From Macrostomum lignano (Eukaryota): a stretch of 64,000 nt of DNA. This document shows, piece by piece, positions 42,467-53,639 of this stretch. Each line of letters starts with the position of its first letter. Position 1 is the first letter of the stretch. A program made the position numbers and the translations under genes. Location of the stretch: NCBI GenBank assembly GCA_002269645.1, contig NIVC01000215.1, positions 682,001 through 746,000 of the forward strand, given 5' to 3'. Under the pieces are notes generated by a model. The model had not been told where the DNA came from and searched no databases. It saw only the letters and a program-made list of their open reading frames with translations.

Positions 42467-45400
42467 ATGGAGACTAAAGAAATCACAGATGAGGTATGTT
42501 CATTTTCAATTCATTTTTTCATTTCCAAAAAAGAATCAAAAGATATATTTAAAAATCAACTATTGATATTTTAGAATCCTTCCAAGGTTGTAATCAATGA
42601 GACTGCTTCTCAAAAGGAAGAAATTGATTCTATTTCTAAGGAATCTGATTTGATTAATCAATTGTCTGAAGCTGCTGTTGAGATTAATCTATGTGAAGCA
42701 CTAGCTGGAGGCCCTGATGATGCTGAAGATGATATTGAAGAACATGAAGCTGTTCTTGCTGCTGTTGAGACTGAGTCAGCCAGCTATGATGAAGAACCGG
42801 TCAAACATGAATCTGGCATACCTGCTGAAAGTGATTCTTTAAAGGTATCTATAATTTCTATCTTGCATATAGAAGATAGAAAAACTATTATCTACAAAAT
42901 TTGCATACTCAAGATTAAAAGTCATTTTTTTTCTAATCTAATTTTCAGGATGTGAAACCCAAGCTATGTTTTATTTGTCAAACAGCTGTGGCTTCTCTGT
43001 TCTGCGAAAGCTGCAGTTCAGGTGAGCACTTTTTAACAAATCCACATTAAAGAATAGCCTAACATTTATAGAATTTACATTAAAGTTAGTAAACAATAAT
43101 TTAACAAAAATGAATTTCAGAGCACATTTCGACCAATTTATGCCTGCATTGCTTTATTAAGTATCACAAAGGTGACATTAAGCATGGAGCTCGTGTGCTT
43201 TCAGCCGATGTAAGCAATTTATTGAATTATTGGTTGTTTGTTCTAAATATTACTAATATGCTGTTAATAATGCTTCCCTACTAAATTATGTTTTAATCTA
43301 GGAAATAATTAAAAATCTACAAGCTGAGATCAACACTTTGGAGATGCCCTACTCGCTTAGAGACTATGACAGCCTCATTGACAATAAAGTGTTTAAAAAC
43401 AGGTATTTTGTTACTGTTACTTGTTACGCTAAATTGATTCTTCAATAGGCTACATGTCCTTCATTAGGCTACATCTTCACTTCATTAGGCTACATCTATC
43501 CTTCATTAGGCTATATCTATCCTTCATTAGGCTATATCTATCCTTCATTAGGCTACATCTTCACTTCATTAGGCTACACCTATCCTTCATTAGGCTACAT
43601 TTTTCCTTCATTAGGCTACATCTAGGCTACATCTATCCTTCATTAGGTTACATCTACCCTTCATTAAGCTACCCAATCCTTCATTAGGCTACACCTATCC
43701 TTCATTAAGCTACACCTATCCTTCATTAGGCTACACCTATCCTTCATTAGGCTACACCTATCCTTCATTAGGCTACACCTATCCTTCATTAGGCTACATC
43801 TATCCTTCATTAGGCTACATCTACCCTTCATTAGGCTACATCTATCCTTCATTAGGCTACCCAATCCTTCATTAAGCTACCCAATCCTTCATTAAGCTAC
43901 CCAATCCTTCATTAGGCTACACCTGTCCTTCATTAGGCTACATCTGTACTTCGTTCTACTCAATGCTTCATTAGGCATACATCTATTCTTCAGAAGGAAC
44001 CTTCCTCCCACCCCCTAACGCTCCCCCTCAGTTACCTGGCTCTGCTCACCGAGTGCAAGGGCGTCACGGCTGAGTTGATAGGCCGAGCCCAGCGCTTCAT
44101 AAACGCATTGCAAGAGCGCGACTCCGTAGAGTGCAGAGAATTGCGTAACGCTTGGCGAGAAAAAGAGGACCGATTGAAATTCGCTCGCAGTGTGCAGCAA
44201 GCCAACTGTGCCAAGGTTCAGCAGTACCAGTGCCGGCTGGCTGCGGCTATCACCCGGCTAGAGAAGCTGAGAGACGGCGGCGGTCAGGGTGACGGCGAGG
44301 CTGCCGAACTCACTGATGACGGCGACTGTAGTGGTTTGCTGGAACAGCTGACCAATATTTATCAAGTAAGCTGGCTTCCTGCGGGGTTGGGATCTGATTC
44401 CCCGTAGTTGGGATCTGATTCCCCGTAGTTGGGATCTGATTCCCCGTAGTTGGGATCTGATTCTCCGTAGTTGGGATCTGATTCTCCGTAGTTGGGATCT
44501 GATTCTCCGTAGTTGGGATCTGATTCCCCACAGTTGGGATCTGATTCTCCGTAGTTGGGATCTGATCCCCCGTAGTTGGGATCTGATTCTCCGTAGTTGG
44601 GATCTGATTCTCCGTAGTTGGGATCTGATTCTCCGTAGTTGGGATCTGATTCCCCACAGTTGGGATCTGATTCTCCGTAGTTGGGATCTGATTCCCCGTA
44701 GTTGGGATCTGATTCCCCGTAGTTGGGATCTGATTCCCCGTAGTTGGGATCTGATTCTCCGTAGTTGGGATCTGATCCCCCGTAGTTGGGATCTGATTCT
44801 CCGTAGTTGGGATCTGATTCTCCGTAGTTGGGATCTGATTCTCCGTAGTTGGGATCTGATTCCCCACAGTTGAGATCTGATTCTCCGTAGTTGGGATCTG
44901 ATTCCCCGTAGTTGGGATCTGATTCCCCACAGTTAATATCTGATTCCCCACAGTTGGGATCTGATCCCCCGTAGTTGGGATCTGATCCCCCGTAGTTGGG
45001 ATCTGATTCTCCGTAGTTGGGATCTGATTCTCCGTAGTTGGGATCTGATTCTCCGTAGTTGGGATCTGATTCCCCGTAGTTGGGATCTGATTCTCCGTAG
45101 TTGGGATCTGATTCCCCGTAGTTGGGATCTGATTCCCCGTAGTTGGGATCTGATTCCCCGTAGTTGGGATCTGATTCCCCACAGTTAATATCTGATTCCC
45201 CACAGTTAATATCTGATTCCCCACAGTTGGGATCTGATCCCCCGTAGTTGGGATCTGATCCCCCGTAGTTGGGATCTGATTCTCCGTAGTTGGGATCTGA
45301 TTCCCCACAGTTAATATCTGATTCCCCACAGTTGGGATCTGATCCCCCGTAGTTGAGATCTGATCCCCCGTAGTTGGGATCTGATTCTCCGTAGTTGGGA

Positions 45401-51400: not shown

Positions 51401-53639
51401 CCCTGCGAGTAAATCGTCAATAATCACCCCTGGAAAAAATGGCCTAAAATCACCCCTGGGAATAAATCGCCTAAAATCACCCCTGGGAATAAATCGCCAA
51501 AAAAATCCCTGGGAATAAATCGCCCAAAATCACCTCTGGGAATAAATCGCCAATAATCACCCCTGGGAATAAATCGCCCAAAATCACCCCTGGGAATAAA
51601 TCGCCAATAATTACCCCTGGGAATAAATCGCCCAAAATCACCCCTGGGAATAAATCGCCAATAATCACCCCTGGGAATAAATCGCCAATAATCACCCCTG
51701 GGAATAAATCGCCAATAATCACCCCTGGGAATAAATCGCCAATAATCACCCCTGGGAATAAATCGCCAATAATCGCCCTTGGGAATAAATCGCAAATAAT
51801 CACCCCTGGGAATAAATCGCCAATAATCACCCCTGGGAATAAATCGCAAATAGTCGCCCTTGGGAATAAATCGCCAATAATCACCCTTGGGAATAAATCG
51901 CCAATAATCACCCTTGGGAATAAATCGCAAATAATCGCCCTTGGGAATAAATCGCCAATAATCACCCCTGGGAATAAATCGCCAATAATCACCCCTGGGA
52001 ATAAATCGCAAATAATCACCCCTGGGAATAAATCGCCAATAATCGCACCTGGGAATAAATCGCTAATAATCACCCTTGGGAATAAATCGCTAATAATCGC
52101 CCCTGGGAATAAATCGCAAATAATCGCCCTTGGGAATAAATCGCCAATAATCACCCTTGGGAATAAATCGCAAATAATCACCCCTGGGAATAAATCGCCA
52201 ATAATCGCCCTCCAGAGGATCAACAGGCCATTGATTTCCGTCGCGAGCCAACGCAAATGGAGTCATCCAACCACCAGCAGCAGACTGAAGGCAATCAGGC
52301 GGACAATGCCGATGCCCCGTCCAGTACGGAAGGCTCCTGTCCGCCTGCCACTGCAGCTGTTCCCCAGCAGCAGTCTGCTGACCAGTTTCCGCCTTCTGCT
52401 CCAACTGTGGAGAACTGGGGAAAATGTTCAAGCACCGAATCTGAGGTGCAGCAGCAACAGCCGATTGTAGTCCAGGAGCCTACTAGACGATGCATTAATA
52501 GGCCAACAGTTATCAAAGCGCTATGCAATCAGCAGCAGATGTACTATAATGATTATCGTTATAGTAATAAGGACAGACAGCCTAAGGACTTCTCCAATGC
52601 GTAAGCTTCTTATTGTGATTGATGGGTTGGTGGGGCGGCTCTTTTTGAAGTTAACGCTGTTGGGGTGGTGGGTGGGGCGGCTCTTTTTGAAGTTACCGCT
52701 GTTGGGGTGGTGGGTGGAGCGGCTCTATTTGAAGTTACCGCTGTTGGGGTGGTGGGTGAGCCGGCTCTATTTGAAGTTACCGCTGTTGGGGTGGTGGGTG
52801 AGCCGGCTCTATTTGAAGTTACCGCTGTTGGGGTGGGGTGGGAGGCATTATTTGAAGTTACCGCTAATGAGGTCGTGGGGCGGGGCCTCTCTTTGAAGTT
52901 ACCGCTGTTGGGGTGGGGTGGGAGGCATTATTTGAAGTTACCGCTAATGAGGTGGTGGGGCGGTGCCTCTCTTAAAAGTTACCGCTAATGGGGTGGTGGG
53001 GCGGTGCCTCTTTAAAGTTTTTAGATACTTATAGCACTCACCTTAAAGTAAGCGTTAATTATCTAGGTTGTCTGTCTGTGAAGCTTTAAAAAAACAATAC
53101 TGTTTTTCGTTTAAATTTCAGCCAATGCTTCTTTTGCATGCAGTTTGGCCACATTCAAGCCCACTGCAAATATCGGTGAGTCGCTCACAGCACTGCCCAA
53201 TTAATATTTTATACCAAATATTAAAGTGTTTTGAATACATTTTTTGCACTGCAGCGAACTGGCTAGCGGAGTTCAGGGCCAATCCAGGCGCTTGCCTCTG
53301 CACCAGCAGCAGTCCTCCCACGCCTCCGTTAACCAGCCTGGCGAGGTCGACAATCCAAAACCGACAGACAGAACCGACGGCGAAGGCGGTCCCGACGAGC
53401 CGGCTGCGGCCGCTGCAGCGACTCCTGAAGTCGAACACCACGCCGGCTTTGACGGCAGCGACGGCGTCAGAAGGCGCAACAACAACAGCGGTCGGGCCGA
53501 CGCCGACGCTGGCGAAACCGGCGCCGAAGTCAATGCCGACTCGTCGCGACGTCGTCAGCAGAGAAACGGCGGCGGCAAGTCGAAGTCGAGGAACAAGAAA
53601 GACGGCACTGGTTACAGAGGCACTGTGAGGCGCAAGTAG
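42467..53639 (+). CDS. B-box / coiled-coil / extended Tudor / CCHC zinc-knuckle protein (multi-exon)
   Basis: Phase-consistent exons: 42467-42493, 42575-42844, 42949-43021, 43121-43209, 43302-43402, 44032-44365, 46339-46958, 49083-49386, 50846-50993, 52216-52600, 53122-53175, 53255-53639. B-box CFIC-x8-CESC-x9-CLHC-x4-H-x5-H; helical coiled-coil segment; Tudor-like PKIGDQVLARCEGFWRRGRV...VQLTDMVRIEKV followed by FPDIPQLAILACL; knuckle CFFCMQFGHIQAHC. The start codon is uncertain because an upstream acceptor at 42441 is in open frame. Confidence 0.75.
43453..43975. repeat. 21-bp minisatellite (TCCTTCATTAGGCTACAYCTA)
   Basis: Direct tandem repeat in an intron. Confidence 0.93.
44390..46320. 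repeat. 21-bp minisatellite (GGGATCTGATTCCCCGTAGTT)
   Basis: Direct tandem repeat in an intron. Confidence 0.97.
46998..48975. repeat. 20-bp minisatellite (TTCAGCTCAGATCCTTCAGG grading to TCAGCTCCAATGCTTCAGG)
   Basis: Direct tandem repeat in an intron. Confidence 0.97.
49405..50760. repeat. ~23-bp minisatellite (ACTCATTTACCGACATATTCATCG)
   Basis: Direct tandem repeat in an intron. Confidence 0.95.
51390..52210. repeat. 27-bp minisatellite (AATAAATCGCCAATAATCACCCCTGGG)
   Basis: Direct tandem repeat in an intron. Confidence 0.95.
52620..53015. repeat. ~42-bp G-rich minisatellite
   Basis: Unit GCTGTTGGGGTGGTGGGTGAGCCGGCTCTATTTGAAGTTACC and variants. Confidence 0.9.

What the first reader, a model, noticed from the sequence alone, without database searches (positions are those of the whole stretch)
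42467..53639. Hidden 11-kb gene with an unusual B-box / coiled-coil / extended Tudor / CCHC-knuckle architecture
The ORF track shows only fragments, but splicing across satellite-filled introns gives one continuous frame. Seen in sequence: the B-box is split over exons 42949-43021 and 43121-43209. The zinc knuckle CFFCMQFGHIQAHC (CX2CX4HX4C) is encoded by a 54-nt exon at 53122-53175, which is only in frame if the upstream acceptor at 53121 is used. Established: B-box plus Tudor domains occur in the Drosophila piRNA factor Qin/Kumo (RING, B-boxes, several Tudors), and Tudor proteins scaffold germ granules and flatworm chromatoid bodies. Inference: a RING-less, single-Tudor protein with an RNA-binding knuckle and basic tail could be an undescribed small-RNA or germ-granule adaptor.
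Basis: partly seen in the sequence, partly recalled or inferred. Interest (0 to 1): 0.75.

Follow-up and report, generated by a model that had tools for sequence, protein, structure and literature searches.

The report
Annotated flatworm zinc-finger gene, Tudor unproven
The 11-kb spliced gene is real, but it is already in GenBank as an uncharacterised Macrostomum lignano protein; its B-box-like zinc module and zinc knuckle are visible in the sequence, while no search I could run confirmed the claimed Tudor domain.

Summary
Observation confirmed. Window 42467-53639 (+) holds a 12-exon gene with GT-AG at all 11 introns. It encodes 919 aa. Six consecutive introns are 68-97% minisatellite.

The gene is not hidden. 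My model is 100% identical to GenBank PAA87857.1 (BOX15_Mlig001290g4, hypothetical protein, Macrostomum lignano). That annotation was derived from transcripts, so RNA evidence joins the B-box, central and knuckle exons. Two further copies are 98% identical. All splice sites are kept in one of them, and dN/dS against it is 0.26.

Domains are only partly supported.
- **B-box:** the Cys/His spacing fits, but Pfam zf-B_box scores 15 bits against a cut-off of 24.
- **Zinc knuckle:** CX2CX4HX4C occurs once in the whole six-frame window, yet only a related knuckle profile matches, below its cut-off.
- **Extended Tudor:** Pfam and PDB sequence searches gave no match. A profile comparison with TDRKH extended Tudors aligns about 25 residues (P about 0.003-0.006). 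AlphaFold2 failed twice.
- **Coiled coil:** my crude test was not significant.

No homologue outside M. lignano was found among 1.84 billion representative proteins. The germ-granule or small-RNA role remains untested speculation. Modest interest.

The parts
42440..42466 (+). Probable spliced-leader trans-splice acceptor (AG at 42440-42441 after a T-rich tract) and short 5' UTR
   Evidence: The GenBank 'partial' CDS of PAA87857.1 starts 24 nt upstream of the ATG, at 42443, directly after this AG. That annotation cuts mRNAs at trans-splice sites. This part is an inference.
42467..42493 (+). Exon 1, start codon, aa 1-9
42575..42844 (+). Exon 2, aa 10-99, acidic low-complexity N-terminus (net charge -23)
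42949..43021 (+). Exon 3, aa 100-124, first half of the B-box-like zinc module (CFIC...CESC)
43121..43209 (+). Exon 4, aa 124-153, second half of the B-box-like module (CLHC..YH......H)
43302..43402 (+). Exon 5, aa 154-187, start of the helical region; last AT-rich exon
43440..43992 (.). Intron 5 minisatellite, 21-bp unit
44032..44365 (+). Exon 6, aa 187-298, largely proline-free region predicted helical at low confidence (possible coiled coil)
44386..46331 (.). Intron 6 minisatellite, 21-bp unit, about 92 copies
46369..46958 (+). Exon 7, aa 299-495, first part of the central region of unresolved fold (alternative in-frame acceptor at 46339)
46774..46836 (+). Tudor-like motif VPKIGDQVLARCEGFWRRGRV (aa 434-454), the only stretch that aligns to an extended-Tudor profile
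47005..48982 (.). Intron 7 minisatellite, 20-bp unit, about 99 copies
49083..49386 (+). Exon 8, aa 495-596, second part of the central region (IPQLAILACLVEP... resembles the extended-Tudor LPxQAxxCxL stretch by eye only)
49415..50756 (.). Intron 8 minisatellite, 24-bp unit
50846..50993 (+). Exon 9, aa 597-646
51381..52210 (.). Intron 9 minisatellite, 27-bp unit
52216..52600 (+). Exon 10, aa 646-774, Q/P-rich segment with few hydrophobic residues
52625..53019 (.). Intron 10 minisatellite, 42-bp unit
53122..53175 (+). Exon 11, 54 nt, aa 774-792, single CX2CX4HX4C zinc knuckle (motif at 53126-53167)
53255..53639 (+). Exon 12, aa 792-919 plus stop, G/D/R-rich tail ending in a basic stretch (aa 886-919, net charge +11)

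Best explanation
This is a real, transcribed and already annotated protein-coding gene of Macrostomum lignano: Mlig001290.g4, GenBank PAA87857.1, listed as a hypothetical protein. It has 12 exons and is probably trans-spliced at its 5' end. Lineage-typical minisatellites in six introns stretch it to 11.2 kb.

It encodes a 919-aa protein that so far looks restricted to this lineage. In order along the protein:
- an acidic, probably disordered N-terminus;
- one eight-ligand B-box-like zinc module with no RING before it;
- a region predicted to be helical;
- a central region of about 300 aa whose fold is unresolved, carrying only a short Tudor-like strand motif;
- a Q/P-rich linker;
- one retroviral-type CCHC zinc knuckle on its own 54-nt exon;
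- a basic tail.

The most likely mode of action is inferred, not shown. The protein would be a non-enzymatic scaffold. It would self-associate or dock partners through the B-box-like module and the helical region, and it would touch RNA through the knuckle and the basic tail. If the central region is a Tudor relative, it lacks the aromatic cage. It would then bind partners without reading methyl-arginine.

My rough sub-confidences are:
- gene model and expression: about 0.97;
- zinc-binding B-box-like module and knuckle: about 0.7;
- RNA-binding scaffold role: about 0.35;
- true extended Tudor: about 0.3.
For: **Gene**
- Continuous 2760-nt CDS across 11 GT-AG introns.
- 100% identity to PAA87857.1, and 98% to two further GenBank copies that have the same exon order including the knuckle.
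- The GenBank annotation was built from RNA-seq and de novo transcripts with StringTie, TACO, TBONE and TransDecoder (PMC5730564).
- All splice sites are conserved in L001, and dN/dS is 0.26.

**Zinc modules**
- The pattern C-x2-C-x8-C-x2-C-x9-C-x2-C-x4-H-x6-H occurs in 0 of 20000 shuffles.
- zf-B_box reaches E 0.023 on the isolated segment.
- CX2CX4HX4C is unique in the six-frame window and occurs in 8 of 20000 shuffles.
- PF16588 scores 19.2 bits, E 0.001. This profile is reported together with PF00098 in the zinc-finger region of a LINE1 element.

**Other regions**
- Helical region: the only stretches with pLDDT above 50 are helices at about 190-270 in the first AF2 model.
- Basic tail: net charge +11 over aa 886-919.
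- Tudor-like motif: hhalign P 0.0026-0.0048. It reaches P 0.00012 when the 40-aa fragment is tested alone. hmmsearch against 2000 shuffles gives p 0.006.
Against: - No domain passes a curated threshold.
- The coiled coil is not supported by my crude heptad test: the real maximum is 6.75 and the 95th percentile of shuffles is 7.25.
- Both AF2 runs were uninformative, with pLDDT 36.5 and 33.1. No fold is established for any part.
- No homologue outside M. lignano was found, so conservation cannot back any domain call.
- No expression pattern or function data were found.
Confidence: 0.55

Rival explanations
1. The central region (aa about 376-596) is a genuine extended Tudor domain. The protein would then be a RING-less relative, in function, of Qin/Kumo or RNF17-type factors, scaffolding PIWI or small-RNA complexes in germ granules or chromatoid bodies.
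For: - A Tudor beta1-beta2-like motif aligns at the expected place, with P 0.003-0.006.
- With greedy extension the alignment runs collinearly and puts IPQLAILACL on the LPFQAIECSL stretch of TDRKH.
- The B-box-like module and the knuckle are compatible with an RNP role.
Against: - No Pfam Tudor-clan match, even on fragments, and no PDB sequence match.
- Every segment other than beta1-beta2 aligns at P 0.2-0.5.
- On the tentative alignment the cage positions read R, L, M, R rather than aromatic residues or Asn. I took the cage positions from memory of SND1 and TDRKH, so this is an inference.
- An exhaustive phmmer search finds no TDRD, Qin or RNF17 relative.
- No expression data were found.
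Confidence: 0.2
2. Two genes or a recent fusion. The AT-rich 5' exons 1-5 (B-box-like part) and the GC-rich exons 6-12 have different origins or are separate transcription units, joined only in gene models.
For: - GC3 is 0.20-0.48 in exons 1-5 and 0.52-0.72 in exons 6-12.
- dS between the copies is higher in the 5' part.
- Older ab initio models disagree on the gene's limits.
Against: - Three transcript-derived GenBank models and one independent older model all join exon 5 to exon 6.
- The junction is in frame with strong splice sites that are conserved in L001.
- The same arrangement is assembled independently in L001.
- An ancient fusion cannot be excluded, but it would not change what the gene is today.
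Confidence: 0.05
3. A young, fast-evolving and mostly disordered protein. The 'domains' are short motifs without a dedicated fold or role, or the knuckle exon was taken over from a retroelement Gag/ORF1.
For: - No homologue in 1.84 billion representatives.
- No curated domain hit.
- About 40% of the protein is low in hydrophobic residues.
- The knuckle's best profile is one reported in a LINE1 element.
- The 5' exons have codon usage close to non-coding background.
Against: - dN/dS is 0.26 overall. It is 0.09 in the B-box segment and 0 in the knuckle and tail. The counts are small.
- Eight correctly spaced zinc ligands are very unlikely by chance.
- Three copies are all kept intact.
Confidence: 0.15

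Closest known systems
RING-less B-box/coiled-coil proteins of the TRIM (RBCC) superfamily, such as Drosophila Brat or vertebrate TRIM14/16/44 (named from my own knowledge)
   Same: A B-box-type eight-ligand zinc module is followed directly by a long helical region and then a C-terminal interaction region. No RING is present.
   Different: - There is a single module with an unusual 9-residue spacer, and it scores below the Pfam cut-off.
- The coiled coil is not verified.
- There is no NHL, PRY-SPRY or other known C-terminal TRIM domain.
- No sequence homology was detected.
Qin/Kumo (Drosophila) and RNF17/TDRD4: RING, B-box and multiple extended Tudor domains, piRNA pathway
   Same: A B-box-like module would be combined with a Tudor-like element, if the Tudor call is right.
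   Different: - No RING.
- At most one Tudor-like region, which fails profile detection and lacks cage residues on the tentative alignment.
- Extra CCHC knuckle.
- No detectable homology.
TDRKH/Papi extended Tudor domain (PDB 6pi7, 5j39), compared directly
   Same: GDxVxA...W(Y/R)RxRV, the beta1-beta2 motif, aligns.
   Different: - Pairwise BLASTP gives E = 17.
- The rest of the domain is not significantly alignable.
- There is no KH domain.
Retroviral-type CCHC zinc-knuckle proteins (Gag nucleocapsid, LINE ORF1, CNBP, Lin28; Pfam PF00098 and PF16588)
   Same: Exact CX2CX4HX4C spacing, with an aromatic residue after the first Cys and Gly-His in the middle.
   Different: - A single knuckle on a stand-alone 54-nt exon inside a disordered region.
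- Met replaces the usual Gly after the second Cys.
- PF00098 does not match, and PF16588 scores 19.2 bits against a cut-off of 26.2.

Membership tests
B-box zinc finger (Pfam PF00643) | Score at or above Pfam's gathering cut-off (24.1 bits) | tested here: not met
   11.2 bits on the whole protein. 15.3 bits, E 0.023, on the isolated segment. DZR_2 and zf-RING_14 score similarly.
B-box zinc finger (Pfam PF00643) | Eight Cys/His zinc ligands with B-box1-type spacing | tested here: met
   C105-x2-C-x8-C-x2-C-x9-C-x2-C-x4-H-x6-H145. The relaxed pattern occurs in 0 of 20000 shuffles. The x9 spacer is longer than the consensus I recall (x4-5).
B-box zinc finger (Pfam PF00643) | Cross-brace fold binding two zinc ions | not testable with these tools
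   The AF2 single-sequence model has pLDDT below 50 across this region.
TRIM / RBCC | N-terminal RING finger | tested here: not met
   Residues 1-99 contain one Cys. The annotated transcript starts 24 nt upstream of the ATG.
TRIM / RBCC | Coiled coil after the B-box | tested here: inconclusive
   Helices are predicted at low confidence. My crude heptad score is not above shuffles.
Tudor / extended Tudor (Pfam PF00567, clan CL0049) | Match to a Tudor-clan profile | tested here: not met
   No family at E <= 10 for the whole protein, the 223-aa region, the 67-aa core or the 27-aa motif. No PDB sequence hit.
Tudor / extended Tudor (Pfam PF00567, clan CL0049) | Alignment across the whole extended domain (SN-like flanks plus the four-strand barrel) | tested here: inconclusive
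   hhalign against a 15-sequence TDRKH/Papi profile is significant only for 24-28 residues, with P 0.0026-0.0048 and probability 7-12%. The other blocks give P 0.2-0.5. HMM score 1.2 bits, with 12 of 2000 shuffles as high.
Tudor / extended Tudor (Pfam PF00567, clan CL0049) | Aromatic cage for methyl-arginine | tested here: not met
   On the tentative alignment the cage positions are R450, L476, M479 and R481. The cage positions were recalled from SND1 and TDRKH, so this is an inference on a weak alignment.
Tudor / extended Tudor (Pfam PF00567, clan CL0049) | Tudor barrel fold | not testable with these tools
   AF2 on the 223-aa region gave pLDDT 33.1. No diverse alignment is available, and a fold search on such a model would be meaningless.
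zf-CCHC zinc knuckle (Pfam PF00098) | CX2CX4HX4C spacing | tested here: met
   CFFCMQFGHIQAHC at 53126-53167. It is the only instance in the six-frame window and occurs in 8 of 20000 shuffles.
zf-CCHC zinc knuckle (Pfam PF00098) | Profile match above the cut-off | tested here: not met
   PF00098 is not reported. The related PF16588 scores 19.2 bits against a cut-off of 26.2.
Qin/Kumo or RNF17/TDRD4 orthology | Detectable sequence homology | tested here: not met
   phmmer of the 927-aa copy against 1.84 billion representatives returns only M. lignano models at E <= 0.001.

The most novel reading that the evidence does not exclude
A Macrostomum-restricted, RING-less B-box and helical-region protein whose central region is a highly diverged, cage-less extended Tudor domain, and whose alternative-looking 54-nt exon adds an RNA-binding knuckle. 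It would be an undescribed adaptor linking PIWI or Tudor-type RNP granules of neoblasts or germ cells to RNA without reading methyl-arginine.
Probability: 0.17. Interest if true: 0.55.

Novelty: new variant of a known kind. Interest (0 to 1): 0.3.

Why it matters
If the central region proved to be a cage-less extended Tudor domain, this would be a domain combination not described elsewhere: B-box, Tudor and zinc knuckle without a RING. It would sit in a flatworm used as a stem-cell and germline model, which has RNAi and transgenesis available. It could then show how lineage-specific scaffolds are added to conserved small-RNA or granule machinery.

As the evidence stands, the value is more modest.
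- An annotated 'hypothetical protein' gains a motif-level description.
- The result shows that sequence-only reading can recover a 12-exon gene across satellite-filled introns.
- It also warns that the Tudor label rests on about 25 residues.

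Tried and rejected
- **Restricted tools:** I used the 98%-identical copy P0001 instead.
- **AF2 on full-length P0001:** pLDDT 36.5.
- **AF2 on the 223-aa Tudor-like region:** pLDDT 33.1. Both models are useless, so I ran no fold search.
- **AF2 with a Tudor alignment:** I did not fold the region with Tudor sequences as its alignment, because that would be circular.
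- **PDB phmmer:** the only hit is a viral zinc-finger tail at E 0.61.
- **BLASTP against the TDRKH extended Tudor:** E 17.
- **Second and third homologue searches:** I spent both on building an extended-Tudor profile. The third returned only vertebrate TDRKH orthologues in its listed rows and added no diversity.
- **Internal repeat (tandem barrels) in aa 299-600:** none.
- **Heptad test for a coiled coil:** not significant.
- **Rfam on the whole window:** no family.
- **Literature and supplements:**
  - No paper main text holds Mlig001290 or Mlig034334.
  - No supplement of PMC5730564 holds either ID.
  - The stored part of Supplementary Table 2 of PMC5816591 does not hold them either. That file was cut when stored, and its rows start with the 'Neoblast, stringent' class, so absence says little.
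- **UniProt name:** the automatic name 'SET domain-containing protein' on an older model (A0A1I8HAP8) has no Pfam support.
- **ORF 41346-41675:** it looked like a LINE reverse-transcriptase tail by eye, but Pfam gave nothing.

Full report
**What is there.** The window is Macrostomum lignano DNA: the best protein matches are M. lignano GenBank and UniProt entries. Reading the sequence and assembling exons in a script gives a 12-exon gene on the + strand. The ATG is at 42467 and the TAG ends at 53639. All 11 introns are GT-AG, and the CDS is 2760 nt (919 aa).

Introns 1-4 and 11 are 79-104 nt. Introns 5-10 are 521-2124 nt and 68-97% tandem repeat, each with a different 20-42-bp unit. Simple and tandem repeats make up about 15% of this genome (PMC5730564). 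Satellite-filled introns are therefore ordinary for the species. The long 'ORFs' inside them are translated repeats.

**The gene is real but not hidden.** My model is 100% identical to GenBank PAA87857.1, 'hypothetical protein BOX15_Mlig001290g4, partial'. Two more copies are 98% identical: PAA51643.1 and PAA83392.1 (UniProt A0A267GDR9). They have the same exon order, including the knuckle exon.

The GenBank annotation of assembly Mlig_3_7 was derived from RNA-seq and a de novo transcriptome. The pipeline used StringTie, TACO, the TBONE boundary step and TransDecoder (PMC5730564). The junctions joining the B-box exons, the central exons and the knuckle exon therefore have transcript support.

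I fetched one other copy, L001 (NIVC01003384.1). It is syntenic, with a Src-type kinase upstream and a PKA regulatory subunit downstream. It keeps every splice site. It carries the same intronic satellites at lower copy number, giving an 8.1-kb gene span against 11.2 kb here. Between the two copies there are 25.5 synonymous and 22.5 non-synonymous differences, so dN/dS is 0.26. That indicates purifying selection.

Older ab initio models (P0002-P0004) skip the 54-nt exon, and P0003 and P0004 run into the downstream PKA-R gene. Skipping exon 11 stays in frame, so it could be a cassette exon, but those models are not evidence that it is.

The GenBank CDS starts 24 nt upstream of the ATG, directly after an AG at 42440-42441 that follows a T-rich tract. 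This suggests a spliced-leader acceptor, which is my inference.

**Relatives.** A word-seeded search of 5.8 billion proteins found only M. lignano models. So did an exhaustive phmmer search of 1.84 billion representatives with the 927-aa copy. The collection does hold many eukaryotic NCBI and UniRef proteins: hundreds of TDRKH orthologues came back. The absence of relatives is therefore meaningful. At this sensitivity the protein looks restricted to its lineage.

**Domain calls, one by one.**

1. **B-box.** Residues 105-145 read C-x2-C-x8-C-x2-C-x9-C-x2-C-x4-H-x6-H. None of 20000 shuffles of the protein gives such a pattern. Pfam zf-B_box scores 11.2 bits on the whole protein and 15.3 bits (E 0.023) on the isolated segment, against a cut-off of 24.1. 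Other zinc-ribbon and RING-like profiles score about the same. I call it a B-box-like eight-ligand zinc module. It is probable, not proven.

2. **No RING.** Residues 1-99 are acidic (net charge -23) and hold one Cys.

3. **Coiled coil.** Residues about 187-268 are proline-free. They are the only part of the first AF2 model with pLDDT above 50, and all of it is helix. My crude heptad score is not above shuffles. The region is plausibly helical, but a coiled coil is unverified.

4. **Extended Tudor.**
   - No Pfam family matches at E <= 10 for the whole protein, the 223-aa region, a 67-aa core or the 27-aa motif.
   - No PDB sequence matches.
   - I checked a recalled TDRKH extended-Tudor sequence against the PDB, where it is identical to 6pi7. 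I built a 15-sequence TDRKH/Papi profile from it and compared.
   - hhalign aligns only VPKIGDQVLARCEGFWRRGRVAYSHDSG to the beta1-beta2 stretch VGDIVAA...WYRARV, with P 0.0026-0.0048 and probability 7-12%.
   - An HMM of the profile run without filters scores 1.2 bits, and 12 of 2000 shuffles reach that.
   - With greedy extension the alignment is collinear and places IPQLAILACL on LPFQAIECSL. Tested separately, every block other than beta1-beta2 has P 0.2-0.5.
   - On that alignment the positions I remember as the aromatic cage read R, L, M, R.
   - AF2 without a usable alignment failed on this region, with pLDDT 33.1. No structural test was possible.
A very diverged, cage-less Tudor-like barrel is not excluded. 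I put it at about 0.3.

5. **CCHC knuckle.** CFFCMQFGHIQAHC is the only CX2CX4HX4C in the six-frame translation of the whole window and occurs in 8 of 20000 shuffles. PF00098 does not report it. PF16588 gives 19.2 bits (E 0.001, cut-off 26.2). PF16588 is reported beside PF00098 in the zinc-finger region of a LINE1 element. The exon shows no non-synonymous change between the copies.

6. **Tail.** Residues 886-919 have net charge +11. Residues 597-773 and 793-919 are poor in hydrophobic residues.

**How it most likely works (inference).** The protein shows no sign of a catalytic domain. It would be a scaffold with three working parts:
- a zinc module and helical region for self-association or partner docking, as in RING-less B-box proteins;
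- a central globular region of unknown fold;
- a flexible C-terminal half that contacts RNA through one knuckle and a basic tail.

Nothing here ties it to small RNAs, germ granules or chromatoid bodies. I found no expression data for it.

**Rivals.**
- A two-gene or fusion reading: about 0.05. It is prompted by the sharp GC3 shift between exons 1-5 (0.20-0.48) and exons 6-12 (0.52-0.72). It is contradicted by four gene models, conserved in-frame splice sites and an independently assembled second copy.
- A young, mostly disordered protein with motif-level 'domains': about 0.15. It is weakened by dN/dS of 0.26 and by three intact copies.

**Novelty and verdict.** The gene is already in public annotation, without name, domains or function. 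The motif-level architecture (B-box-like module, helical region, unresolved central region, single knuckle, basic tail, no RING) matches no family I could test, and no homologue was found. I file it as a new variant of known kinds of zinc-finger scaffold proteins, not as a Tudor protein. Interest is modest, at 0.3. It would rise to about 0.55 if a real, cage-less extended Tudor domain and a germline or neoblast granule role were shown.

Noticed in passing
window 42467-43402 versus 44032-53639: There is a sharp compositional break inside the gene. Exons 1-5 have GC3 0.20-0.48, close to intron background (introns 1-4 have GC 0.19-0.24). Exons 6-12 have GC3 0.52-0.72, and the neighbouring PKA-R exon has GC3 0.81. 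dS between the two copies is also higher in the 5' part. This could reflect a fusion origin, different constraint, or gene conversion limited to the 3' part.
   Followed up: partly
window 43403-53121 (introns 5-10); L001 10970-17549: Six consecutive introns each carry a different minisatellite (units of 21, 21, 20, 24, 27 and 42 bp). BLAST shows the intron 5 and 6 arrays in the same introns of the other copy, and the gene there spans 8.1 kb against 11.2 kb here, consistent with fewer repeat copies. Without the repeats, introns 5-10 would be about 60-390 nt. Why each intron acquired its own array is unexplained.
   Followed up: partly
window 57381-58607 (+): The downstream neighbour is a cAMP-dependent protein kinase regulatory subunit (RIIa plus cNMP-binding domains). 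At least 409 aa lie in one exon. The older gene models P0003 and P0004 fuse it to this gene.
   Followed up: partly
window about 19865-24045 (+); also 17377-18627 (+) and 8842-9322 (-): The upstream neighbour is a Src-type tyrosine kinase gene (SH3-SH2-kinase in L001), 95% identical to the L001 copy. More diverged kinase-like pieces (79-90% identity) lie further upstream, one of them inverted.
   Followed up: no
window about 27560-38680: About 11 kb of AT-rich sequence lies between the kinase and this gene, where the syntenic locus L001 has only about 1 kb. It is presumably an insertion or repeat expansion. It holds no long ORF of note.
   Followed up: no
window 46339 versus 46369; L001 10388-10405: Two small splice alternatives stay in frame. 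An acceptor at 46339 would add FAQKSAATPQ, but the GenBank models use 46369. PAA51643.1 lacks the six residues ESDSLK, although its own locus encodes them before a normal GT donor. That suggests an alternative donor or a transcript mapped from another copy.
   Followed up: partly
window 42440-42443: The annotated transcript appears to begin directly after an AG that follows a T-rich tract. This is what a spliced-leader trans-splice acceptor would look like.
   Followed up: no
window 1-3000 and 59001-64000: Blocks of extreme GC and AT skew (down to -0.89 and up to +0.90) with GC from 0.25 to 0.57 are presumably further strand-biased satellites.
   Followed up: no
window 54246-55551: Another 29-30-bp minisatellite of about 44 copies lies just downstream of the gene, between it and PKA-R.
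   Followed up: no
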